This document shows, piece after piece, positions 7,440-48,203 of a DNA stretch of 64,000 nt. Every line of letters begins with the position of its first letter. Within the stretch, counting starts at the first letter, position 1. The notes beneath the pieces are model-generated. The model ran no database searches, was not told the origin of the DNA, and saw nothing but the letters and a program-made list of their open reading frames with translations. A program made the translations under genes and the position numbers. The DNA comes from Selaginella moellendorffii (taxonomy: Eukaryota; Plantae; Lycopodiophyta): positions 528,897-592,896 of the forward strand of contig NW_003314306.1 of the NCBI RefSeq assembly GCF_000143415.4. The letters run 5' to 3'.

Positions 7440-8553
7440 TCACTCTTCCTTCTCGTCGATGCTGGGCTTGATCACCTTGATGTAAGGAAGAAGCCCGAAA
7501 AAATACCGCAGCTCCGGAGACCAATCCAATTGCTGAGCTCTACAAAACTGTAAGAACATGTTGGCGAAGTAGGACGTGAATCCCATCAAGACGTGCCAGA
7601 GAGCGTGGCCCTGGGGATTCACCGGGAGAGCACTGACTTTGCCGCAAAAGTTTCGATCGATCACCCAGCAAAACGCTGCCACCAGCGTCGTGATGATGCA
7701 CCAGCGAGCCAGGCGCCGAGCGGGAGTGCCTTTGGAGTGGATGTAGTACTTGTACATCCGAGGGAGGCACAGCAGCGTCAGGAACAGATAGTGGAGCTCG
7801 AAACCAAGGACGAATCGAAACTGTGAGTGGAGAATCGCAAACACGGTACCGTAGATGAAGAGAAACGTCGGCATTGTGCTGCGGTAGTGCCAGTCCGGGG
7901 AGTAGAGCACGTAGATGTAGAGGAGCATCACCCAGACCATTGGAGTCTCGTCGCTCTGCTGTTGCCTGGAAGAAAAAAAGTTTTGGAACTTAGAACATAT
8001 AGATCTGAAAACCAAAAAGTCCTAGAGATCGTAGGAGTAGAACTTGGCTTAGGAAGAACTGATAAGAGAACGATTGAATCTACTTGAGAAAACTGGAAAG
8101 TAGAAAGAAAGAAAAAGGATCTCTCAAGCTTGGAAAGACTTGAGAGCTAAGAACTTCGAAGAAAGAAAATGGATCGAGAAAACTGGAAACTTAGAAAGAC
8201 TTGAGAGCTGAGAACTTGAAAAAACGAACACGGATCGAGAAAACTGTAACTTAGACTTAGAACTTGAAAGAAAGAAAAAAAGGGAGAAGAAGGGACTAAA
8301 CTTACGCGTGCTGGAGGGTCGCGTGGAAGAGCATGCTCCCGATGCACAGCGCAATTGTGGCGAGGTGGAGGACGCTGAATCGCTTCTCAAATCGCTGGGA
8401 GATTGAGTTGTAGAGGCCAATGAAGGCGAGGAGGATGCACGGCACATTGGACAGCGTGTTGAAGAACTCGGCAATGTAGCGAGAGCGCTCGTAATTCCTC
8501 TCGCACCACTCTGTGCTGGAAGTGATTGCCCCCCAGTAGCCATTTGCTGCCAT
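7440..8553 (-). CDS. ACER: Alkaline ceramidase (CREST family), 2 exons (8306-8553, 7440-7965), 257 aa
   Basis: MAANGYWGAITSSTEWCERNY..IAEFFNTLSN..GSMLFHATL..QQQSDETPM..NPQGHALWHVLMG; GT-AG intron in correct phase. Confidence 0.95.
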
Positions 8554-13669: not shown

Positions 13670-16600
13670 TCAAGAATGAGTGGAACGAGGATGTGAATGA
13701 GAACGATGAGGAGGATGAGATGAGCGGCGAGGGATGGGAGATGGAGAAAAAGAATGAGGACTGGGACGACTAGGATAGCGACGGTGGAAGTCCTGAACAA
13801 GGTCAGGAAAATGAATCAGGTTGTCCGCAAGTTCCCAAGTGCATTCTTCAAGCCCGTAACCCTTCCAGTCGACCAGATAGTAGAGTTTAGACCATGAAAT
13901 CTTGGAATCAAGGATGTCCTGAACCTCATACTCAGAGCCATCCTCGAGCTGCACTGGTGGAGGTGGAGGAATGACCCGATTGGGAATAGGATTGGGAATA
14001 TAAGGCTCAAGGAGAGAGGAATGAAAAACGGGGTGAATTTGATATGAGGAGGGAAGTGCAAGGCGATAAGTGACAGGATTAATGATGGCAGTGATAGGGA
14101 AAGGACCGAGGCATTTGAAATCAAGTTTTGGACAAGGCCTGGTGGTGGAGATATTTCGCCTGAGGAGCCAAACTTTATCCCCAATATTGTAAGGGGAACA
14201 ATCCTGACGATGGACATTGGCAAATGTTTTGTGAGATTCCTAAGCACAATGGAGGTGGAAGGAGATGGAGTTGTGGATTTCTTGGAGGTTGGAGACAAAT
14301 GCCTCAGAGCGGGGATTTGAATGAGAGGATTCGGATGGAGAAGGAAGTGAGAGATTGAATCGGGGATTTTGGCCAGAGTTTGCAAAGAAGGGGGAAATTC
14401 GAAGAGAGGAGTGAATAGAGTTGTTATAGGAGAACTCAGCAAGGGGAAGGATATCGAACTAGTTATCCTGATGATAGTTGATGAAGCACCTTAAGAATTG
14501 TTCTAACGTCTGAATTGTTCGCTCGGACTGCCCATCAGTTTGAGGATGATACGCCGAAGAGAGGTTGGCCTTCACTCCAAGCAGCTGCAAAAACCGTTGC
14601 CAGAAATGAGAGATGAACTAAGGCCCCCGATCCGAAACCACATCTGTAGGAATCCCATGAAGTTGAAAAATTTCCCTAAATACCAGTTTTGCCATGTCCT
14701 CGCCTGAAAACTCCTTGGTACATGGCAAGAAGTGCGCCATCTTTGTGAAGCGATCCACCACGACTAAAATGCTATTGAAACCTCCAAAACTCGGAAGATC
14801 ACTCAAGAAATCCATGGAGATGGATTCCCAAGGACCTGAAGGGACTGGAAGGGAACAAAGCAAACCTGAAGGAAGGTGGCAAGGTACCTTATTCCGGGCG
14901 CAAGTGTCACAGGAGGTAACAAAAGCTTTGATGTAGTCGTCCATGTGAGGCCACCAAAAATCCCGTGCAACTAGCTCATAGGTTTTCGCAATGCCGAAGT
15001 GACCAGCAGTCGGGCTATCATGGCATGCCATTAGGACCAACCTTCGAGCATCACCTTCAGGAACGTAAAGCTGCTCCCCACGGTATAATAAGCCATCTAA
15101 GAACTCGAACTCGTCAAATCGCCGGCAGTCAGGAGTCACAGGGTGTCCAGCCTGAAGATGGGGGAAAATGTCACTAGCGAGATCATCGAATTGAAGATCA
15201 TTTCTAATGGCATCCATCAAGGAGGAGTCTTGAGGGGCCAGGGAAATTGCCATAACTTGAAGCCGATCAAGACCGAGGATAATTTGATCCTGTTGATCGA
15301 AGGCAGGATTACCAGGCCTGAGACTGAGATAGGAGCACCTTGAAAGAGCATCATGAAGGCCTTGAAGCTTTCCAGGTCTGTACTTGATAACAAAGTCAAA
15401 CCGACTCAGAAATTGTGCCCACCTTGCTTGACGACGGCTTAAAACTCGGGAAGTGGCAAAGTACTCGAGATTTTTGTGATCTGTCCAGACTGTTGTTTGA
15501 TGGCCCACCCCCTCCAAGAAACGGCGCCACTCTCCAAAGGAATCCACAATGGCAAGGAGCTCCTTGTCGTGGATTTCGTAATTGATCTTTGTAGGCTGGA
15601 ATTTCCGAGAATGGAAAGCGACCGGATGAAGTTCTTGATCCGCTCTGAGTTGAGACAGCACAGCACCGATGGCAAAGTCGGAGGCGTCAGCCTCGATGAA
15701 GAAAGGTTGTGAGGAATCAGCATGGATCAAAACGGGGGCAGAACTGAAGGCTGCCTTGAGTGTGTCGAAGGCATGCTAGGCAGCAGTAGACCAAGAGAAG
15801 GGAACATCCTTGTGAGTGAGATGCGTGAGAGGAAGGACAATGTCAGAGTAGTGATCACTGAATTTGCGGTAGAAGTTGGCGAAGCCAAGGAAAACCTGAA
15901 CGTCCAACATTGATTGTGGAGGCTCTCACTCGAGAATAGTCTTGACTTTGGTAGGATCCATCGTGATACCCTCAGGAGTGACAATGTACCCAAGGAACTC
16001 CACAGACTGCTGATCGAAGGAACATTTCTCAAGCTTCGCATATAGGCCGTGTTCTCGCAGCTTCGCCAGCACCTTGCGTACATGTTCGTCGTGCTCCTCC
16101 TGAGTTCTTGAGTAGATGAGGATGTCATCGAGGTAGACGATCACCATCTGATCAAGAAACTCCCGAAAGACGTCGTTCGCCATGTGTTGGAAAACTGCTG
16201 GAGCATTTGTCAAGCCAAATGGCATGACAGTGTACTCGAAGTGGCCATAGCAGGTTCGGAATGCAGTCTTCCATTCATCACCAAGCCAGATCCGGATTGT
16301 ATGCGCCACAAAGGTCAATCTTGGTGAAGAAGCGGGCACCGCCGAGGTGTTCCAACAAGTCCGAGATCAGGGGCAGTGGATAACGGTTCCAAATAGTCAC
16401 CTTGTTCAAACTTTGGTAATCAATGACTAGCCGCAAACTCCCATCCTTCTTCTTGACAAAGAAGATAGGCGCTCCAACCGGGGACTGCGAATGCTGAATG
16501 AACCCCGAGGCAAGGTTCTCATCCACGTACTCTTTGAGGGCCTTAAGCTCAGACGGGGATAACCCGTAGATAGGTCCTCACGGAGGTGACGCTCCTTCCT

Positions 16601-17438
16601 GTAAATCAATGGGACAGTCATAAGGCTGATGAGCAGGCAGTACACTAGCTTTTTTCTTGTCAAACACATCCCCAAAATCATGATACTTCTCAGGAAGACT
16701 GACAGGAAAGACATGCAAAGCAAAAAGGAAAATAGGTTCTTCATGAAGGAATTCTTTCATAGTGATTGTGGAGATAGGAGGAGGTGTACGACTAAATGGA
16801 ATGATGAGACGAGGATACTATCCAGTGTAAGATGGAAGAGAGGAAAAAGAAGAGGGTGAAAACTTCGTAGAGTCAGGAACAGAACCTCGATTTAAGTTTA
16901 GGGAACTTTTCCTGATTCGGACTCGATGAACAGTAGGGGAAGCCGTGGGAGATGGTGATGTGGGAGAGATGAGTTGTAAGTCCTTCCAACAAATCTAAGG
17001 CTGATGTAGTTGGAACCAAGGAAGACCAAGCACCACAGAAGAGGACTTGCTGTTGATGATGTTGAAGGCGATATCGGTGACGGTGGACCTAATGTGTACT
17101 CGAATAGGCAACGTTTCCCTAAGTCCAGAAGATGGAGACACAAAATGCCCGCCGATGCCTTCAACCCTCAGATCCCGTATGGTAGGAGAAAGAGGAACAT
17201 GATGTCGGGCAGCAAAGTCCGTATCCATGAAGCAGGAAGTTGCACTCGAGTCCAATAGCGCTAAAGCCTTGAGTCCTGATTGTCCGATGAAAGAAAGGAG
17301 ACATGGGACACGGAAGTTGCGAGAATTGGTGGTGGCTTTGATGAAAGGTGGTGAGGAGCTTGATAAGGAAGAAAAGTGATTTTTATTCGGGGAGTCCAAA
17401 TAGATAGCTCCTACTCTGTTTGGACAGGGTCGTTTCCC
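13670..17438 (-). pseudogene. pol: Chromovirus pol (protease, RT, RNase H, integrase, chromodomain), broken by stops and frameshifts
   Basis: ALLDSSAT (protease), [12 protein letters not shown] and [10 protein letters not shown] (RT), EADASDFAIGAVL (RNase H), HDSPTAGHFG..C..C, SMDF, SDRG (integrase), EYEVQDILDS..YYLVDWKGY..TWE (chromodomain); split over several ORFs. Confidence 0.93.
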
Positions 17439-18388
17439 GACTGCAACAGAGGTGGACTTTGAGGCAGAGTGAACTCGAGCAGTCGGGGAGGCTTCTTGGG
17501 ACACACAGCTGCTTTGTGATTAGGATCAGCATAGTAGAGGCAAAGATTATGAGATATTCGATGTTGCTTCTCAGTAAGACTCAACTTTCCTCTAATGAGT
17601 CGGGGAGTACCAGAAATATCCATCAGGACCGGAGCAATAGGTTTAGGACTATGCCCCGAAGACTCAAGTTGGGATTCCTGAGTCTGGGACAGAAAAACAG
17701 CAGCGCGGCGACTTTCTTGACGACGTTCAAAGAGACGATTGTCACATCGAACAGCTTTGTTGATGGCATCCGACAGGTCCTTGGGATCCTCCATGGTGAG
17801 CAACAAATCCTTGACACCGTTGTTGAGGCCGAAACGAAATTGGTCAATCAGGGCCCGCTCATCCCACTGAGTGTCCAAGGCAAGGAGCTGGAACTCTGCA
17901 GCATAGATCGAGGCAAGTTGAGACCCCTGAGAGAGACGTCTCATCTTTGTGGTAGCAGCCCGAACCCGATCCGTCTCGCCAAAACATGCTTCGAGCTTCT
18001 CTTTGAACAATTGAAGATCCATCAGCTCCGGAACCACGACCCCTTTCATGCTCCTCTCCAGAAGAGGAGAAAACCATGACAAAGCTGCACCCTCGAGCAA
18101 CGTCCCAATCGCGCCGATTTGAGACTCGGGAGTGGGGTACCGCCAATGTTGAAGTGCAAAGATCAGCTCCATTTGGTTCAAAAATCCACGAAACTCCGAA
18201 CGCTTGCCTGAAAATTTCACCGGGAAACTCACCTTCGGTTCAGGAACTTTGCTGGATCCTTGAGCCGAAAGTGAAGCAAGCTCCTGCTGCATGCGAAGAA
18301 GGGTCGCCTTCAGCTTGGTATTCTCAGACTGGATTTTTGCAAGGACTTCGGCAAAGAAATCAGGATGGCTTGGAAACTCCATTGGCAA
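17411..18388 (-). CDS. gag: Chromovirus gag (capsid + degenerate CCHC knuckle)
   Basis: PVKFSGKRSEFRGFLNQ..LLEGAALSWF..LSQG..YAAEFQLLA..FRFGL..LCLYYADPNHKAAVC (second Cys mutated). Confidence 0.9.
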   Translation of the reverse strand: MPMEFPSHPDFFAEVLAKIQSENTKLKATLLRMQQELASLSAQGSSKVPEPKVSFPVKFSGKRSEFRGFLNQMELIFALQHWRYPTPESQIGAIGTLLEGAALSWFSPLLERSMKGVVVPELMDLQLFKEKLEACFGETDRVRAATTKMRRLSQGSQLASIYAAEFQLLALDTQWDERALIDQFRFGLNNGVKDLLLTMEDPKDLSDAINKAVRCDNRLFERRQESRRAAVFLSQTQESQLESSGHSPKPIAPVLMDISGTPRLIRGKLSLTEKQHRISHNLCLYYADPNHKAAVCPKKPPRLLEFTLPQSPPLLQSGNDPVQTE

Positions 18389-29319: not shown

Positions 29320-30214
29320 TTAAGTGACCACCTTCGCGACCTTGCGTGGTTCTCTTTGGTTCGTTAAAGGACATTGCATTTCTTGCCAGCTTACGGCAAC
29401 CATTGTAGCACCTGGAAGAACACACAGAGAAAAAAAATCGAATCGCAAAACTTTTGGTAGAAACGAGGAAGAACTTTGGCATGCCAGCGACGCTCACAGC
29501 CGAAACTACGCCAAGTTCGTTCTTTGCAGTGGAAAGATAGTAAGCGCGAGAGTCTCCGAGCGAGATCTGGGAAAAAATCGAGAGAAAACGATCGATCGAA
29601 CAGTGAAGTGACGAGTTTTAGTTACCACTTCCGCTCGAATGATGTCTCCAGGCCGGAACGAAGAATGCATGTCTACTTTGTCGATCTCAGTGAGCCTTAC
29701 ATCCTGTTGTCTTCGCAGAGAGAGAAAATAAAAACCATACAAGTTTGAAGAACATCACGAGAACTTGGAAAGAAATCCTGGTACCTGACTATGCCCGTGA
29801 ATTTCTCCTTCACGGCCCTTGGCCCGACGCAAACGATATCCGCCGAAGCCATTCGTGCCTGGACTTTCGTGATCTACAATCGCAACAAGCAAAAGAAAAG
29901 AAATATCAAAGGAGTTCCATAAATTTCTACCTTGGCAGTGACTGTCGATCCAGCTTCTGGCACTGCGTCCCTCTCCTTCTCCCTGCGAATCTCGATCGTA
30001 GGCCTCTGGAAAGATCTCAGCAGAAATTTCTTCCAGCAAATTCGCCCATTACCAGATCATCCGAGCCTTGTTTCGCCTCGATCAAATGCCGGATCCCGAC
30101 GAGCGAGGCGTAAATCTTACCGTCGTGGCAGTAGGAGCCTCTGCCGGCATTGAATTCGGACGCCAGGCCAAGCAGCTCGCCCGGCGTCCGGAGATCGTCT
30201 TCCCGCTTCGCCAT
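29320..30214 (-). CDS. CSL4: RNA exosome cap subunit CSL4, multi-exon
   Basis: TPGELLG..AGRGSY..IYASL; FTGIVR/QQDVRLTEIDKVDMHSSFRPGDIIRAEV/ISLGDSRAYYLSTAKNELGVV; SWQEMQCPLTNQREPRKVAK. Confidence 0.95.
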
Positions 30215-30336
30215 AGCCACGAAGAACCCTAAACCCCTAGTTATTAACTACGGATAATAAACCAACATTAAAGGCCGAATTTTGCTGATAAAGACATGAT
30301 AGAACCTCCTTAGAATGACTGACTGACAAGAACACA
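30215..30336. promoter_or_regulatory. Putative ~120-bp bidirectional promoter between CSL4 and the NAPE-PLD-like gene, with telo-box-like AACCCTAAACCCCTAG
   Basis: Divergent ATGs at 30214 and 30337; telo-box-like motif at ~30224-30240. Confidence 0.55.
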
Positions 30337-32152
30337 ATGGGAGAAGAAGGGAATACCGATGGCGCTCGCGACGGCAGCTCGCGCGATCATCACCTCGCGA
30401 GGGGGAAGGGATTCTGGAATCCATGGCCATCGTTTGGATTCGAGGGGAATGCGCGAGAGGCGATCGTCATGATGCTCAGGGCAAGGCCGCCTTTCTTTTC
30501 TTTCAATCGATCGATCATTCTTTCCTCGTCTATTCCCCTCCAGGATTTCGATCGCAAGCGCTGCCAAGTGACCGCCGAGGTGCGCGCGAGATTGGGACTG
30601 CGGCCGCTCAGCACAGATCTGGCGAGCATTCGCAGCCCGCCAGAGGAATCGGCCCAGGTATTTCTTGGCAGGATTTGGGAGCCAAGAAGCGTGATTTCTT
30701 GGGAAATTTTCTATGGCAGGTGACATGGATCGGCCACGCGACATTCCTCGTCCAGTTCGATCGTCTCAACATCCTCACGGATCCAGGTGAGCTGCGATTT
30801 CGCTGCTCTTGCCAGAGATTTAACCCAGCGAGAGTTTTCCAGTGTGGTCGGAGCGCTGCTCTCCCTCGAGCATCATTGGGCCGAAACGGTAGTAACAAAT
30901 TTCTTTGTCCTTCTTTACCTTGTGTGGTGTTGCAGTGTGATGCCTGTTCCGTTCCCAATAAAGGAGCTACCTCCCATCGACGTGGTCATTATATCTCACA
31001 ACCATTACGGTACTCTCGAACATCTCGATCGATTTGTTTCTTTTCCTAGCGTTCTCAAGCGAACTTCTTTGAACAGACCATCTAGACGAGACAACCGTCA
31101 GAGCTCTAGGAAACACGCCTCTCTATCTTGTCCCGCTCGGAATAAAAAAATGGTAAGATCTAGCTTGCGTGTAAAGAAATAGTTTTTTTTCTCAGTGATG
31201 GTTTACTGTTGTGACCAGGTTTAACGGAATCGGAATCACAAACGTGGTATGTTTCTCGATCGTTTGTAATTCTCGGGATCCTCTCGTTTGATCATCACAG
31301 GTGGAATTGGACTGGTGGGAAGAACATAAAATACCGTACAGCGGTTCTAAAGTTCTCAAGGCGGTATGCACGCCTTGCCAACATTTTTCTGGTCGTGGTA
31401 TATTTGATCGAAACAAGGTTAGAAAGAACTTAAGTCAGAGCTTTGTAATTATCCTGTTCACCCGTTGCAATGCAGACGCTCTGGTGTTCTTGGGTCATGG
31501 AAGCAGACAAGAGGAAGTTCTACTTCGCCGGTGATACGGGGTTTTGCACTGTTCCTCGGCATAGCGACCACAATGGTGGCGTTCCAGAAACAGGCACAGG
31601 AGGTGGCTAAGTTCTTTCTTTATATTCTTTTCCTCTGTAACGTGCGCTGACTTGACATTGCAGCTCAATTGTCTGTTTGTCCCGCATTTGAAGAGATTGG
31701 AAAACGCTATGGACCGTTTGACTTCGCATTCATTCCAATCGGAGCTTACAGCCCTCGCTACTTCATGAGTCCTATCCACTGCTCTCCAGGTAAATCACCA
31801 ACCAGGATCCGATTGCATATATGTCTTATATATCGATCAACGTTGACAGAGGATGCCGTGGCCATCCACCGAATCGTCAGATCCAAGCTATCAATTGCGA
31901 TGCACTGGGGTCAGTCTTTTCCGATTCTTCTTTTTATTTTCTTTGGCCTGTTGTGAATTAAACTTGATCGCAGGAACGTTTGTTCTGACGGACGAGCCGC
32001 TGCTGGAACCGCCTGCGAGATTGCAGAAGGTCTGTTTCGTGTGAAGTTCTTTTCTCATGTCGTCGGTCTGTTCTGTCCAGGAGCTGGAGAGGTTGAAGAT
32101 AGACGCGTCCGCATTTATCACAATGAAGCACGGCGAGACAAAGTGTATATGA
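30337..32152 (+). CDS. N-acyl-phosphatidylethanolamine phospholipase D (NAPE-PLD/FMP30-like metallo-beta-lactamase), ~13 short exons
   Basis: Spliced product: [143 protein letters not shown]. The HxHxDH zinc motif is intact. Confidence 0.9.
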
Positions 32153-32403
32153 AGTGAATGCCACCTTACAAAGTACTACTGATTCGGTGAGCCGCTCTTT
32201 ATGATTCTATTTCATACGATTTGTATTAGGTGGATAAGTTTCCCGTGAAGCTCTTTACAGTGAGGCGTTACAGGCGCTTGACTTTAGATTCGTGAGAGAC
32301 ATCTATGGGACTAGTTTGTCTCCGGATTCGGTGAACTACTTCTATCATTAAGTCTGGAGATTTTCATTTGGAGCTCTCTACTAGTGAACTATCTGCAGTG
32401 AGT

Positions 32404-32986
32404 ATGATTTACGCGATCCTTCTCTCGTGTGCCATCATCTCCTCGTTCACGACGATTTCTCAGGTACCACTTTCCCTCTCTTAACTTCCAAGTTCTCGAA
32501 TCGTCTCTTTTCCAGGCATGCTCGAAGAAGACCATCATCTTCTACGGACAAAACGTACGCTACCCAGCAAACTCGTCCCAAACCTCCGGGCAGCAAACAC
32601 TGGGAGGAGGATGCCTCGACCTCCCTCCTTACAACCCCGGCTACGCCTCGCTTCTCAGGCAAAAGCTCACGCTTGGGCCGGAGTATAACTCCCCCCAAGT
32701 TGGAATGGACTACGGCGGCTACGTTGCGAGCGGAGCCAGCGTCGCGTTTGGAACCGGCCAGTTTGTTCTCGACAACCATCCTTTGTTCGTGGGGACTCTT
32801 GCCTACAAGAGGCGAAGGGACATCTCGGAGAAAACCATAGCTTTCTCCGTCCGGGTTTATGGCAACGAGAGCTTCCATGGATTTGGAAATGGTACCAGCG
32901 TCACTGTTGCTTCGTACTACTATGGTCTCAACCTCGTCTTTAGATTTGTGATAGATATCTTTAGAAGCGAGTCGTGCATCCTCTAA
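32404..32986 (+). CDS. Secreted, divergent dirigent-like protein, 2 exons (32404-32463, 32516-32986)
   Basis: Signal peptide MIYAILLSCAIISSFTTISQ, GT-AG intron; IIFY, LTLGPEYNSPQVG, GTL and VYGNESFHGFGNG align loosely to dirigent motifs. Confidence 0.6.
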
Positions 32987-41086: not shown

Positions 41087-43129
41087 ATGGAGAGAGCGCA
41101 ATCCCTGGGTCTCATCGATACTTGCACCACTTTGCCTGCTGCCAGAAGAATCCACGCTCGCATTCTAACCTCCTTCCCAGGCGATATCTTCATCCACAAC
41201 AGGCTGATCGAAATGTACACAAAATTGGGGAGCCTGGACGATGCGACAAAGACTTTCGAGGAATCGCAACGCAAGAATCTATTCTCTTTCGTGCTCATGC
41301 TCTCAGCTTATGCGCGCGCCGGGCAGCTCAATCGCGCTAAATCCCTCTTTGACGCCATGCCGGCGTGGAATCTAGTCGCATGGAATGCGATGCTAACTGC
41401 ATATACCCGTTCTGGGCAACTGGTGTATGCTAGGTCTGTATTTTCAAATATGCCGGATAAAAGTATTATTTCTTGGAACACTATGTTAGCACTGTACTCA
41501 CTGACCGGGGAAATCGACGTTGCCACCGAGACCTTTCTACAAATGCCTTTGAGAGACTTTATCTCGTGGACAACGATGCTTTCTGCATATACGCAAACTG
41601 GGTATTTTGAAGAAGCGGAAATTCTGCTGGACGAGATGCCGCAGCATTCTTTTAACTTGTGGGTATCTGTCCTTTCTTCTTATGCTAAACACAAATTAAT
41701 TAAAAAAGCGAAGAATGTTTTTTCAAGAATGCCGTATAGAAATCTTATTGCTTGTAATGTAATGGTCCTTGCATATGCCCAAAACGGGGATTTTGATGAA
41801 GCTTTTAGTTTTGTAGAAAGTTGCATGCCTGAGAGGGATTTGGTGACATGGACGTCCTTGCTTGCAGCATTGGCACAATACGGTCATGTGGAAGATGCCA
41901 AGCGTGTGTTTGATTCGTTCCCAGGACAAGATTCCATCTCGTGGACCGCAATGCTGACGGCATATGCCCAGAACGGGTATCTCGAAGATGCGAAGCGAAT
42001 GTTTCGTGACATGCCTGAACTGAATCTCGTGTCGTGCAACTCTATGATGGTGGCTTTTGCTGAAAATGGGGAAATTGACTCTGCAAAAGATGTTTTTAAT
42101 AGCATGCCAAAACATGATGTCATCTCTTGGACGTCTATGATGGTTGCTTATACGCAGAATGGTTTCTTAGAAGAGGCGAGAGAAACATTTGATCGCATTC
42201 CTGTGAAGAACTTAGTTTCTTACAATGCCATCCTCTCTGCATATGCCCAATCAGGGAATATCCAAGATGCTAGAAGAATCTACGCTGTAATGCCTCAACA
42301 CACAGTCACGTCCTGGACGTCTATGATCACCGCATTTGCTCAAAATGGTCTTTTGGAAGAAGCAAAGCATGTTTATGACCAAATGGGCCAAAGGGATCTC
42401 ATTGCAATGGCTTCGATGCTTTCGGCATATGCTCAAAATGGACACATTGTCGAAGCCAAGAGATTCTATGATAGTTTTCCAGAATGGAACATGGTATCAA
42501 CTAACACGATGCTTTCGGCATATGCCCAGCATGGCTATCTAGATCAAGCACTTGTTGTCTTTGACAATATGCCCCAGAGAGACGAAGCTACTTGGAATGC
42601 AATCCTGGCAACTTATACTCAGAACGGACATCTTTCAGATGCCAAGAGAATCTTTCACTCCATGCCTAGCCACAATATCATCTCGTGGAATACCATTTTA
42701 GCTGGTTTTGTGGAAAGTGGACAGCCAGCAATGGTGAAAAAGCTTTTCAATGAGATGCGATCAACAATTCATCCGGACAAGGCTTGCTTTGCCATGGTCC
42801 TCATTGCCAGCAGCCAAGATGGCAAAGTTAACAAGGGGATCCAAAACTTTAGAAGCATGGTTTACGACTATGGAATCCAACCTTCGAAGCAGCACTATTG
42901 CTGCATGGTTGATATCCTTTCAAGAGCTCGGCATTTGGATGTGGCAATGGAGCTAATTGAGAGCATGCCTTTTGTTGCTGATGGAGTGGATTGGATGTGC
43001 TTTCTTTCAGCTTGCGGGCGTCAAGCGCATGGTCATGCTGGCTTGAGTGTGGCAAGGCATGCAGTTGAGAAAGACGAGAAAAAAGCAGCGTTTTACGTGT
43101 CAGTGGCAAACATCTACTCAGAGCTTTGA
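41087..43129 (+). CDS. PLS-class PPR protein with a long run of ~31-aa S-type motifs and a truncated E domain (no DYW)
   Basis: Repeated SWTxMLxAYAQNGxxxxAKxxFDxMP; terminal HYCCMVDILSRA..MPF..W..LSAC..YVSVANIY; intronless. Confidence 0.93.
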   Translation: MERAQSLGLIDTCTTLPAARRIHARILTSFPGDIFIHNRLIEMYTKLGSLDDATKTFEESQRKNLFSFVLMLSAYARAGQLNRAKSLFDAMPAWNLVAWNAMLTAYTRSGQLVYARSVFSNMPDKSIISWNTMLALYSLTGEIDVATETFLQMPLRDFISWTTMLSAYTQTGYFEEAEILLDEMPQHSFNLWVSVLSSYAKHKLIKKAKNVFSRMPYRNLIACNVMVLAYAQNGDFDEAFSFVESCMPERDLVTWTSLLAALAQYGHVEDAKRVFDSFPGQDSISWTAMLTAYAQNGYLEDAKRMFRDMPELNLVSCNSMMVAFAENGEIDSAKDVFNSMPKHDVISWTSMMVAYTQNGFLEEARETFDRIPVKNLVSYNAILSAYAQSGNIQDARRIYAVMPQHTVTSWTSMITAFAQNGLLEEAKHVYDQMGQRDLIAMASMLSAYAQNGHIVEAKRFYDSFPEWNMVSTNTMLSAYAQHGYLDQALVVFDNMPQRDEATWNAILATYTQNGHLSDAKRIFHSMPSHNIISWNTILAGFVESGQPAMVKKLFNEMRSTIHPDKACFAMVLIASSQDGKVNKGIQNFRSMVYDYGIQPSKQHYCCMVDILSRARHLDVAMELIESMPFVADGVDWMCFLSACGRQAHGHAGLSVARHAVEKDEKKAAFYVSVANIYSEL

Positions 43130-46779: not shown

Positions 46780-48203
46780 ATGGATGCGATTCATTCTGAA
46801 TCTCTTCATGACTGCAATCAATTAAGCAGCAGTAGAGTTGTTCAATCTGCCTTCCATGTCATTCGGCCTCAGCACGTTCTACCACCTTCACCTCATTTTC
46901 TCTCAAACCTTGATCTTTGCTACAGCAAGCCTGAATTCTGCGCACTTGTGCTCTTCTTCAGGGATTGCTTCGTCCCTGCCACAGGAGCCAAGAGTTTTCT
47001 AGACAGGCTCAGGTCTTCACTGTCCAAGGTGCTAGTCTTCTATCCTGTTCTCGCTGGAAGGCTCAGGGAAAGCGGGAGTGGAAGGCTCGAGGTAAACATG
47101 AACGGCCAAGGTGTCCACTTTGTGGAGTCAAAGGTGGACGCAAGCTTCCAAGATTGGCAAGACATACGCCAGTGCCCACTAGACATAGATTTATCGCTCG
47201 ACACCGCTGTTGTCAATCCCAGCGATGTTCCTGTTATCAAGTTCCAAGTGACACAGTTTCGCTGCGGGGGCATTGCCATAGCAGTTCATTTCTTGCACAT
47301 TGTCCTGGACGGCTCCAGCCTCTACAGCTTCCTCAACGCATGGACTCAAGTTCACCGTGGAAGCACAATATTTTGTGAGAGCTTTCCAAGAGAACGGGTG
47401 CCCTTGGCTAGGGATCCTCCAATCATTGACGCTGCTGCACCCGACAAGCAAATCGATGCAAGCAACAACACGCCCTGCAATCTGGTGACACTTCGAATGG
47501 AGCAAACCGCAATAGATGCTTGCAAGCGCGAATCTCAACCGGCACCTTTGCCTACAACGGTGGAAAAGCTACGGGCTTTGAGGCAGTGTTGTCGATGCTA
47601 TGGTCGTCTATGCTACGTGCACAGGGAGTTCCGCATTACCTTGACACGTCTCTCTCGTTCCCTGTCAACTTGCGCGGCCCGAAACTAGCACTCGTCCCCC
47701 AAAACTATTTCGGCAATGCCATTGCCATTTGCCAGGTTCATGCGCCTCGAGCTGGTGACATAGTTGCTTCGGACTTATCGTATGCTGCGAATCTCATACA
47801 CAAAGCCAAGACCTCCTGCAATGGAGCATCCGTTCAGAGCATGCTGGACTGGCTGGAGCTCAATCCTGCTCATCATCACAACCAGGAGCTTCACTGGAGG
47901 CGGGGAATTACATCCACGACCATCACCAATTTCCCCATGTATGGTATCGACTTTGGGTGGCGAGGAGGAACACTCTCCCAGCTTTCCTTTCTGCCGAGCA
48001 AAGTTCCACCCTACATGCCATCTGTATGTGGAATGCTGCCCTCGCCAAGACCCAAGTCAATAGAGATTGTCATTGGGCTGCATCACCAGGGCCGAGAAGT
48101 GCTGTTACAGGACCATCTCTTCACACGTTATTTCTCAGCGTCCGAGATTAAACTCTGGACTGGAGAAAGCATATGTAGAGCTTTGAGGAGAGTCCCAAAA
48201 TAG
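46780..48203 (+). pseudogene. BAHD acyltransferase with a single frameshift near 47525-47540
   Basis: LSNLD, YPVLAGRL, QVTQFRCGG, HIVLDG (HxxxD) in ORF 46780-47688; PVNLR..YFGN and DFGW in the overlapping ORF 47520-48203; no intron signal at the junction. Confidence 0.85.

What the first reader, a model, noticed from the sequence alone, without database searches (positions are those of the whole stretch)
30337..32152. Intact animal/fungal-type NAPE-PLD gene in a land plant
Seen: about 13 tiny exons, hidden from the ORF track, assemble into a complete MBL-fold enzyme with all NAPE-PLD motifs ([30 protein letters not shown]). Known: this family makes N-acylethanolamines in animals (yeast homolog FMP30), and to my knowledge Arabidopsis has no clear ortholog. 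The insert after GDTG followed by [18 protein letters not shown] reads like fungal members. Inference: either an ancient gene lost in flowering plants or a fungal transfer, implying a dedicated NAE-producing route in this lineage. It sits among ordinary plant genes, which argues against contamination.
Basis: partly seen in the sequence, partly recalled or inferred. Interest (0 to 1): 0.7.

Follow-up and report, generated by a model that had tools for sequence, protein, structure and literature searches.

The report
Spikemoss NAPE-PLD gene, inherited not transferred
This is a real, expressed 13-exon gene of the spikemoss Selaginella moellendorffii for the zinc enzyme that makes N-acylethanolamine signalling lipids in animals; public databases already name it, and it was inherited vertically from green-algal ancestors, not acquired from fungi, and appears to be missing from flowering plants.

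Summary
Observation confirmed. Window 30337-32152 (+) holds a 13-exon, 368-codon gene with 12 introns of 47-67 nt (11 GT-AG, 1 GC-AG). All 12 introns are spliced out in transcript contigs from 4 independent studies. Every exon peptide is an exact piece of the public protein [quoted passage not shown], so the gene is already annotated.

The protein matches human NAPE-PLD (4QN9) at E=2e-84 and 44% identity. The predicted fold matches it at TM 0.75/0.85, and all seven metal ligands are kept.

The fungal-transfer idea is rejected:
- The nearest relatives are a lycophyte, liverworts, mosses, Chlorokybus and Klebsormidium. They form one clade (99/98), separate from the fungal clade (99/96).
- An AU test rejects lycophytes + fungi (p=3e-11).
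- All 12 introns sit at the same position and phase in Marchantia and Sphagnum. Six of Klebsormidium's seven coincide, and none of 14 fungal introns do.

No fern, gymnosperm or angiosperm ortholog surfaced. The one "barley" entry falls outside the plant clade.

The "fungal-like" insert is shared by most non-animal members, and land plants have their own version of it. The catalytic function is inferred, not assayed.

The open literature I searched still says that NAPE-PLD arose in opisthokonts and that plants use PLD beta/gamma.

The parts
30273..30336 (+). 5' UTR, as far as transcript contigs reach. It contains two tiny upstream ORFs (30296-30313 and 30315-30326).
   Evidence: Contigs of X2 and X1 start at 30273 and 30287. 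The uORFs were read.
30337..30480 (+). Exon 1 (residues 1-48), with the start codon and the conserved F-x-NPWPS motif. The donor is GC (a GC-AG intron).
30544..30657 (+). Exon 2 (residues 49-86), a variable N-terminal region.
30720..30786 (+). Exon 3 (residues 87-108 plus 1 nt). It holds the first beta strands of the MBL fold and the invariant D107 (30780-30782).
30843..30888 (+). Exon 4 (residues 109-124), the conserved S-x-R-C-SP...GPKR stretch.
30936..31009 (+). Exon 5 (residues 124-149). It encodes H145 (30997-30999) and H147 (31003-31005) of the HxHxDH metal motif.
31077..31152 (+). Exon 6 (residues 149-174). It completes the D149 codon and encodes H150 (31079-31081).
31219..31246 (+). 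Exon 7, 28 nt (residues 174-183).
   Evidence: The exon has the same 28-nt size in Marchantia, Sphagnum and Ceratodon.
31301..31417 (+). Exon 8 (residues 184-222), with ELDWWE and PCQHFSGR. The metal ligand H211 is at 31382-31384.
31476..31602 (+). Exon 9 (residues 223-265), with FAGDTG and the bridging ligand D242 (31533-31535). The lineage-specific insert starts at 31548.
31664..31789 (+). Exon 10 (residues 265-307). It holds the end of the insert, [15 protein letters not shown] and the invariant H303 (31777-31779).
31850..31909 (+). Exon 11 (residues 307-327), with MHWG. The metal ligand H325 is at 31903-31905.
31974..32029 (+). Exon 12 (residues 327-345).
32081..32152 (+). Exon 13 (residues 346-368) and the TGA stop.
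32153..32400 (+). 3' UTR, covered by transcript contigs at least to 32400. Some contigs remove an optional intron, 32186-32249 or 32186-32259.
   Evidence: tables 5 and 8.

Best explanation
The locus is the single, intact, transcribed NAPE-PLD ortholog of Selaginella moellendorffii. It encodes a 368-residue soluble or peripheral metallo-beta-lactamase-fold enzyme with a two-metal (zinc) centre. By homology, the metal-activated water attacks the phosphodiester of N-acyl-phosphatidylethanolamine and releases an N-acylethanolamine plus phosphatidic acid. The gene was inherited vertically. It was already present, with much of its present intron structure, in the common ancestor of Klebsormidium, Chlorokybus and land plants. 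It is kept in liverworts, mosses and lycophytes and appears to have been lost before or within the seed-plant lineage. Shown here: the gene model, its splicing and expression, its identity with the public protein, the fold, conservation of the catalytic residues, the phylogenetic placement and the shared introns. Inferred: the substrate, the products and the physiological role.
For: Gene model and splicing: (12 of 12 introns removed in contigs from 4 studies). Identity with NCBI 'NAPE-PLD [Selaginella moellendorffii]'. Family: Pfam Lactamase_B_2, E=4e-40. Human NAPE-PLD 4QN9 at E=2.2e-84, aligned over residues 25-366. AlphaFold model pLDDT 92, with 4QN9 as top fold hit at E=2.8e-37, TM 0.75/0.85 and 44% identity; the next MBL protein is at 2e-15. 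The human Zn ligands H185/H187/D189/H190/H253/D284/H343 align to H145/H147/D149/H150/H211/D242/H325, all kept and invariant or nearly so in 55 homologs. Vertical descent: the top hits are Diphasiastrum 69%, Marchantia 67%, Riccia 65%, Ceratodon 64%, Sphagnum 63%, Chlorokybus 60% and Klebsormidium 56%, ahead of fungi at 52% or less. In the tree, lycophytes get 97/81, embryophytes 100/100, streptophytes 99/98 and a separate fungal clade 99/96. An AU test rejects lycophytes + fungi at p=2.9e-11. All 12 introns share position and phase with Marchantia and Sphagnum, 6 of Klebsormidium's 7 coincide, and none of the 4 + 10 fungal introns do. Plant context of the window. S. moellendorffii contains arachidonic and juniperonic acids and juniperoyl-ethanolamide (PMC5264637), so there are NAE products for such an enzyme to make.
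Against: No enzyme assay exists for any plant member, so the substrate is inferred from 44% identity to the human enzyme. Residues lining the mammalian lipid cavity and bile-acid sites were not compared because the structure paper is not held. Human Q320 is I302 here. The deep backbone of the tree is unresolved: the streptophyte clade carries the same type of insert as fungi and many protists, and lacks the insert-free form seen in animals. A very old transfer or ancient paralogy therefore cannot be excluded. Gymnosperms and some ferns make NAEs of C20 acids without any ortholog having surfaced, and seed plants make NAEs by other routes, so the enzyme is not needed for NAE formation in general.
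Confidence: 0.82

Rival explanations
1. The gene entered the lycophyte lineage, or land plants, by horizontal transfer from a fungus.
For: On exons 10-11 alone, the best-scoring named representatives were chytrids and Mortierellomycota. The protein has an insert after GDTG at the same site as fungal members.
Against: With the full protein, ten streptophyte sequences outrank all fungi. They form a clade at 99/98 outside the fungal clade at 99/96. Forcing lycophytes together with fungi costs 98.7 lnL units, p-AU 2.9e-11. All 12 introns are shared with liverwort and moss, 6 are shared with Klebsormidium, and none with Basidiobolus or Gonapodya. The land-plant insert has its own signature. The early fungal ranking came from a short 81-residue query searched against 50%-identity representatives.
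Confidence: 0.01
2. A very ancient event placed an insert-bearing, fungal/protist-type copy in the streptophyte ancestor. This could have been a transfer between early eukaryotes or the sorting of two old paralogs, one insert-bearing and one insert-free. In that case the gene has been vertical within streptophytes but has not come straight down from the first eukaryote.
For: Insert-free forms (a vertebrate, KSB1 and Calditrichaeota bacteria, an MMETSP protist and P0364) group at 99/96 away from the insert-bearing forms (fungi, streptophytes, a red alga and several protists). Opisthokonts are thus split across the two types, which simple vertical descent does not predict.
Against: The backbone nodes are unresolved. 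Only one animal sequence was included, and the red-algal branch is very long (1.94). The root is set on the bacteria by choice.
Confidence: 0.12
3. The protein belongs to the NAPE-PLD family but has a different main substrate or role in plants. It might act on other phosphodiester lipids or in organelle phospholipid homeostasis, as has been discussed for yeast Fmp30 (my own recollection).
For: No plant member has been assayed. The plant proteins carry a lineage-specific 22-32 residue insert next to the bridging Asp. Human Q320 is not conserved. Seed plants make NAEs without this gene, and that activity is attributed to PLD beta/gamma (PMC10108025).
Against: All the metal ligands, plus D107 and H303, are conserved, and the protein is collinear with the human enzyme along its whole length with a near-identical fold. 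There is no transmembrane segment or obvious targeting peptide: the maximum 19-residue hydropathy is 1.28. Yeast and nematode members of the family do produce NAEs (PMC2691958 and PMC4244089, abstracts).
Confidence: 0.18
4. The gene is a contaminant, an assembly artefact or a dead gene.
For: None was found.
Against: It is flanked by plant-specific genes on the same contig. It has Selaginella-style 47-67 nt introns, is spliced in 4 studies without mismatches, has an intact reading frame and catalytic residues, and shares its intron positions with other land plants.
Confidence: 0.005

Closest known systems
Human/mammalian NAPE-PLD (PDB 4QN9, 8P90)
   Same: The two proteins are collinear over about 340 residues at 44% identity, E=2e-84. 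They share the MBL fold (TM 0.75/0.85). The HxHxDH motif and the H, D and H metal ligands are the same, as are the D147 and H321 equivalents. Both carry the [21 protein letters not shown] and HWGT motifs.
   Different: The plant protein has a 22-residue insert (247-268) between GDTGFC and VCPAFEEIG that the human enzyme lacks, and a shorter, unrelated N-terminus. Human Q320 is Ile here. The bile-acid and dimer sites were not compared. The gene structure is 13 tiny exons.
Orthologs in Diphasiastrum, Marchantia, Riccia, Sphagnum, Ceratodon, Chlorokybus and Klebsormidium (several already named NAPE-PLD by NCBI)
   Same: They are 56-69% identical and form one clade at 99/98. Land-plant members share the GDTGFC-TV..HxGGVP insert. 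Intron positions and phases are identical in Marchantia and Sphagnum (12 of 12), and exons 3-7 and 10-13 have the same sizes.
   Different: Selaginella introns are 47-67 nt, against 100-2700 nt in the bryophytes. The algal members have the GDTGYRSVP form of the insert and fewer introns.
Fungal NAPE-PLD homologs (yeast Fmp30 family; chytrid, Mucoromycota and Dikarya proteins)
   Same: They belong to the same family at 45-52% identity, with an insert at the same site and the same catalytic residues.
   Different: They form a separate clade (99/96), share no introns, and have a different insert signature, YRSVP...LPxCPAF. Yeast Fmp30 is described as a mitochondrial membrane protein (my own recollection), whereas no transmembrane segment is predicted here.
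Plant HKD-type phospholipases D beta/gamma, the enzymes usually credited with NAPE hydrolysis in seed plants
   Same: They are proposed to carry out the same reaction, NAPE to NAE + PA (PMC10108025).
   Different: The fold and mechanism are unrelated: they are C2/HKD PLD-superfamily enzymes, not di-zinc MBL enzymes. No PLD domain is found in this protein.
Bacterial MBL-fold hydrolases of Marinimicrobia, KSB1, Calditrichaeota and Fidelibacterota; more distantly T. maritima TM_1162 and UlaG-like proteins
   Same: The first group are full-length homologs at 44-51% identity. The distant ones share only the MBL core.
   Different: Their function is unknown. Those whose motif could be read (KSB1, Calditrichaeota) lack the insert, and the bacteria were used as the outgroup in the tree.

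Membership tests
NAPE-PLD family (zinc metallo-beta-lactamase-fold phospholipase D) | Metallo-beta-lactamase fold (alpha-beta/beta-alpha sandwich) | tested here: met
   Pfam PF12706, E=4.1e-40, covering 103-326. The AlphaFold2 model has pLDDT 92 and pTM 0.92. Foldseek's top hit is 4QN9 at E=2.8e-37, TM 0.75/0.85.
NAPE-PLD family (zinc metallo-beta-lactamase-fold phospholipase D) | Binuclear metal site: the HxHxDH motif plus a distal His, a bridging Asp and a C-terminal His (human H185, H187, D189, H190, H253, D284, H343) | tested here: met
   These positions align to H145, H147, D149, H150, H211, D242 and H325 (alignment; residues checked). They are invariant or at least 90% conserved in 55 homologs. 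The list of human ligands comes from my recollection of the 4QN9 paper, which is not held.
NAPE-PLD family (zinc metallo-beta-lactamase-fold phospholipase D) | Full-length collinearity and specific similarity to characterised NAPE-PLD, and not to other MBL subfamilies | tested here: met
   4QN9 scores E=2.2e-84 against the next PDB family at 3.8e-06. In the fold search the gap is 1e-37 against 1e-15. The Atlas's nearest cluster is 'NAPE-PLD', chordates, score 0.97.
NAPE-PLD family (zinc metallo-beta-lactamase-fold phospholipase D) | Other residues reported as needed for activity (human D147 and H321, from mutagenesis; my recollection) | tested here: met
   D107 and H303 are present and invariant in 55 homologs. 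The neighbouring human Q320 is I302 here.
NAPE-PLD family (zinc metallo-beta-lactamase-fold phospholipase D) | Placement in a tree together with named NAPE-PLD orthologs | tested here: met
   The protein lies in a 35-row eukaryotic group that also holds a vertebrate NAPE-PLD and the fungal homologs, inside a streptophyte clade at 99/98.
NAPE-PLD family (zinc metallo-beta-lactamase-fold phospholipase D) | Hydrolysis of N-acyl-phosphatidylethanolamine to N-acylethanolamine + phosphatidic acid | not testable with these tools
   This needs a recombinant enzyme assay or knock-out lipidomics. No report for any plant member was found in the library.
NAPE-PLD family (zinc metallo-beta-lactamase-fold phospholipase D) | Hydrophobic substrate cavity, homodimer and bile-acid activation sites of the mammalian enzyme | not tested
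   The structural paper is not held, so the residue lists were not available to compare.
HKD phospholipase D superfamily (plant PLD beta/gamma) | Two HxKxxxxD motifs and a PLDc domain | tested here: not met
   Only the Lactamase_B_2 and Lactamase_B_3 domains were found. The protein is not a member, although the proposed reaction is the same.

The most novel reading that the evidence does not exclude
The MBL-type NAPE-PLD is not an opisthokont invention. It was part of the ancestral streptophyte lipid-signalling toolkit, is still the working NAE-forming enzyme in bryophytes and lycophytes (lineages that also keep C20 polyunsaturated acids and anandamide-like amides), and was lost on the way to seed plants, where HKD-type PLDs took over. 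That would give plant NAE biology a genetically tractable, animal-like biosynthetic step, for example in Marchantia.
Probability: 0.55. Interest if true: 0.55.

Novelty: already known. Interest (0 to 1): 0.35.

Why it matters
The gene itself is not a discovery. RefSeq already calls this exact 368-residue protein NAPE-PLD, and the Marchantia and Klebsormidium orthologs carry the same name.

What seems not to have reached the literature I could search is the evolutionary picture. Reviews still state that NAPE-PLD "arose in opisthokonts" (PMC10894036) and that plants make NAEs through PLD beta/gamma (PMC10108025). The results here show an expressed, catalytically intact ortholog that has been inherited vertically, with its introns, from streptophyte algae through liverworts, mosses and lycophytes, and no seed-plant counterpart was found.

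The lineages that keep the gene overlap with those that keep arachidonic-type fatty acids and their ethanolamides (PMC5264637). That makes a concrete and cheap experiment possible: knock out or assay the Marchantia or Selaginella enzyme and ask whether an animal-like NAE route operates in early-diverging land plants.

Tried and rejected
1. Exon-by-exon Pfam scans gave only sub-threshold MBL hits (13-23 bits against cut-offs of 24-27). They fit the family but decide nothing on their own.

2. The exhaustive representative search used the uninterrupted exon 10 - intron 10 - exon 11 reading (81 aa). It found 967 family members but no plant protein among the top 150. Its fungal top hits briefly favoured the transfer idea, but that ranking was an artefact of the short query and the 50% clustering.

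3. A 20-sequence profile search was swamped by fungi. Its only green-lineage row was "Mesostigma", which later turned out to be chytrid-like.

4. The Diphasiastrum gene locus was not on record, so intron comparison within the lycophytes was not possible.

5. The human NAPE-PLD structure paper is not held, so the cavity and bile-acid residues were not compared.

6. Nine literature searches found no paper on a plant, bryophyte or lycophyte NAPE-PLD gene. Two of them were badly targeted.

7. NCBIfam gave only a sub-threshold generic "metal-dependent hydrolase" hit.

8. Contamination and pseudogene readings were considered and rejected.

10. The exons were never joined into one sequence for any tool. 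Whole-length work used the public protein P0296.
Full report
**Observation**

I read window 29800-32800 directly and built the exon model by hand and by script.
- The gene runs from the ATG at 30337 to the TGA ending at 32152 on the + strand.
- It has 13 exons of 28-144 nt, 1107 nt in all, giving 368 codons plus the stop.
- The 12 introns are 47-67 nt long. Eleven are GT-AG and intron 1 is GC-AG.

No exon is long enough to stand out in an ORF list, so "hidden from the ORF track" is a fair description.

**Exon-by-exon rule**

- Single exons give sub-threshold but consistent hits to the Pfam beta-lactamase-superfamily domains.
- Exon 8 hits human NAPE-PLD (PDB 4QN9) at E=8e-4, and exon 10 at E=5.5e-14.
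- Intron 10 is 60 nt with no in-frame stop. Window:31666-31908 is therefore one uninterrupted reading across exons 10 and 11, and I used it as the query for the exhaustive representative search.

Later searches returned the public protein P0296. One search shows that each in-frame exon peptide is an exact, ordered substring of P0296, with exactly one residue left over at each of the seven split codons and nothing missing at either end. P0296 is therefore this gene's product, and all whole-length analyses used it.

**Expression and splicing**

Sampled 31-mers of window:30200-32400 occur at shares of 0.38-0.48 in about 20 small runs from 10 studies. That share is roughly the exonic fraction of the stretch.

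I laid four runs from four studies on the stretch. Their contigs skip exactly the 12 predicted introns (63, 62, 56, 47, 67, 66, 54, 58, 61, 60, 64 and 51 nt) and show no base differences. The records do not state that these libraries are RNA. However, intron-less joined forms of twelve consecutive introns can only come from spliced transcripts. The gene is therefore transcribed and spliced as modelled.

**Host and context**

P0296 is named by NCBI [quoted passage not shown]. An earlier follow-up on another piece of this genome independently reached the same species (s1-405337).

The neighbouring genes are typical of land plants:
- an At4g14310-type propeller;
- two plant-type LRR genes;
- a 680-residue single-exon PPR protein;
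- a BAHD acyltransferase;
- a Ty3/gypsy element;
- an alkaline ceramidase;
- immediately upstream and head-to-head, the exosome CSL4/EXOSC1 gene.

Contamination is excluded.

**What the protein is**

- Pfam finds Lactamase_B_2 at E=4e-40.
- The protein aligns with human NAPE-PLD over residues 25-366 at E=2.2e-84. The next PDB family is at 4e-6.
- An AlphaFold2 model built on a 55-sequence alignment has pLDDT 92 and pTM 0.92.
- The model's best structural match is 4QN9, at E=2.8e-37, TM 0.75/0.85 and 44% identity. That is more than twenty orders of magnitude ahead of other MBL-fold proteins.

The seven human metal ligands are H185, H187, D189, H190, H253, D284 and H343 (listed from my recollection of the structure paper, which is not held). 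They align to H145, H147, D149, H150, H211, D242 and H325 in the plant protein. D147 and H321 align to D107 and H303. All of these are invariant or at least 90% conserved across the 55 homologs.

No transmembrane segment is predicted.

The most likely mechanism is therefore that of NAPE-PLD: a di-zinc centre activates water to cleave the phosphodiester of N-acyl-PE, giving an N-acylethanolamine and phosphatidic acid. The fold and the catalytic residues are shown here. The substrate and products are inferred.

**Origin**

The short exon 10-11 query first returned chytrid and Mortierellomycota proteins, and a fungal-dominated profile search returned mostly fungi. This looked like support for a fungal origin.

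Searching with the gene's own protein reversed the picture:

| Hit | Identity to P0296 |
|---|---|
| Diphasiastrum (lycophyte) | 69% |
| Marchantia (liverwort) | 67% |
| Riccia, two species (liverworts) | 65% |
| Ceratodon (moss) | 64% |
| Unnamed EukProt transcript (P0298) | 64% |
| Sphagnum (moss) | 63% |
| Chlorokybus (streptophyte alga) | 60% |
| Klebsormidium (streptophyte alga) | 56% |
| Unnamed EukProt transcript (P0156) | 50% |
| Fungi | 52% or less |
| Marinimicrobia, KSB1, Calditrichaeota bacteria | 51% or less |

P0156 also scores above the fungi but does not join the streptophyte clade in the tree.

A 41-sequence maximum-likelihood tree (LG+C20+F+G4 PMSF, careful search) gives these supports (ultrafast bootstrap / SH-aLRT):

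| Group | Support |
|---|---|
| Lycophytes | 97/81 |
| Mosses | 100/98 |
| Liverworts | 100/99 |
| Embryophytes | 100/100 |
| Embryophytes + Chlorokybus + Klebsormidium | 99/98 |
| Fungi (a separate clade) | 99/96 |

Forcing the lycophytes together with the fungi costs 98.7 log-likelihood units, p-AU = 2.9e-11.

**Intron positions**

I mapped six homologs exactly onto their own genomic loci and placed all introns on a common alignment.
- All 12 Selaginella introns lie at the same column and phase in Marchantia and in Sphagnum. Exons 3-7 (67, 46, 74, 76 and 28 nt) and exons 10-13 (126, 60, 56 and 72 nt) have identical sizes in all three.
- Ceratodon shares nine at exactly the same position, plus one that is 2 columns off in the poorly aligned N-terminus.
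- Six of the seven Klebsormidium introns coincide with Selaginella introns.
- None of the four Basidiobolus or ten Gonapodya introns coincides.

The gene, with much of its intron structure, therefore predates land plants. A fungal transfer into lycophytes or embryophytes is refuted.

**The insert after GDTG**

Residues 247-268 are indeed absent from the human enzyme. Tabulating the tree taxa shows three states:

| State | Where it is found |
|---|---|
| No insert | the vertebrate, KSB1 and Calditrichaeota bacteria, an MMETSP protist, P0364 |
| GDTGYRSVP...LPxCPAF insert | fungi, Chlorokybus, Klebsormidium, a red alga, several protists |
| GDTGFC-TV-x-x-S-[DE]-H-x-GG-VP insert | only the embryophyte clade |

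The insert is thus an old feature of most non-animal members and does not mark a fungal origin.

In the tree the insert-free and insert-bearing forms separate (99/96 for the insert-free group), which splits the opisthokonts. The deepest history, whether ancient paralogy or very early transfer, is unresolved. I carry it as a minor rival.

**Distribution**

No fern, gymnosperm or angiosperm protein ranks with or above the fungi.
- The only seed-plant-labelled entry is UniProt F2E5V4 "Hordeum vulgare predicted protein". It has the GDTGYRSVP-type insert and lies outside the streptophyte clade, so it is most likely a non-barley cDNA.
- NCBI holds hundreds of angiosperm proteomes, so absence from angiosperms is well supported.
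- Absence from ferns and gymnosperms is only weakly supported.
- No Physcomitrium patens protein appeared either. I could not follow this up.
- Non-opisthokont members do exist outside the green lineage. One is the red alga Cyanidiococcus. Others are protist transcripts from MMETSP and EukProt.

**Literature**

Nine full-text searches found no paper that describes a NAPE-PLD gene in Selaginella, Marchantia, mosses or streptophyte algae.
- A 2024 paper repeats the view from McPartland et al. 2006 that "NAPE-PLD arose in opisthokonts" (PMC10894036).
- A 2022 plant paper attributes NAPE hydrolysis in plants to PLD beta/gamma (PMC10108025).
- Gachet et al. 2017 (PMC5264637) found arachidonic and juniperonic acids and juniperoyl-ethanolamide in S. 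moellendorffii, so plausible products exist in this species.
- Subscription papers and theses are not covered by the library, so a prior mention elsewhere cannot be excluded.

**Verdict**

This is a genuine, intact NAPE-PLD ortholog in a land plant, and the "ancient gene lost in flowering plants" reading is the supported one. The fungal-transfer alternative is rejected.

The gene is already annotated under this very name in public databases, so I rate it "already known". The remaining interest lies in the under-reported evolutionary pattern and in an untested but readily testable function.

Noticed in passing
P0067 (EukProt 'Mesvir1', Mesostigma viride); not in the window: The only Mesostigma homolog nests inside chytrid fungi (99/99), next to Gonapodya, Rhizophlyctis and Synchytrium. 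Its best hits are chytrids at 48-50%. It is probably a chytrid contaminant of that assembly, or a transfer.
   Followed up: partly
P0303 (UniProt F2E5V4_HORVV); not in the window: The 'Hordeum vulgare predicted protein' of this family lies outside the streptophyte clade and has the GDTGYRSVP-type insert seen in fungi, streptophyte algae and protists. It is most likely a non-barley sequence in the barley full-length cDNA set.
   Followed up: partly
window 29506-30220 (-) and 30247-30357: The exosome CSL4/EXOSC1 gene (Pfam ECR1_N and EXOSC1) lies head-to-head with the NAPE-PLD gene. Transcript contigs of the two genes overlap at about 30273-30292. One contig shows a minus-sense (CT..AC) junction from 30247 to 30357 that reaches into NAPE-PLD exon 1. 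This suggests a shared bidirectional promoter and some antisense overlap.
   Followed up: no
window 30296-30313 and 30315-30326 (+): There are two tiny upstream ORFs (5 and 3 codons) inside the transcribed 5' UTR of the NAPE-PLD gene.
   Followed up: no
window 32186-32259 (+): Some contigs remove an optional GT-AG intron in the 3' UTR, of 64 or 74 nt. One contig continues about 600 nt beyond 32400 towards the downstream gene, which starts near 32400 and has no Pfam family.
   Followed up: no
one search hit list: No Physcomitrium patens protein appears among the close hits, although Ceratodon and Sphagnum orthologs do. This points to a possible lineage-specific loss in a moss that is reported to contain anandamide.
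   Followed up: no
P0001 (405 aa representative); not in the window: The top hit of the representative search is a protein containing two tandem copies of the C-terminal half of a NAPE-PLD homolog. It is probably a gene-model or assembly artefact.
   Followed up: no
window 7440-8012 (-), 13816-18388 (-), 41087-43126 (+), 46780-47685 (+): Other genes in the window are an alkaline ceramidase exon, a Ty3/gypsy retroelement (gag, RNase H, integrase), a 680-residue PPR protein and a BAHD acyltransferase.
   Followed up: no
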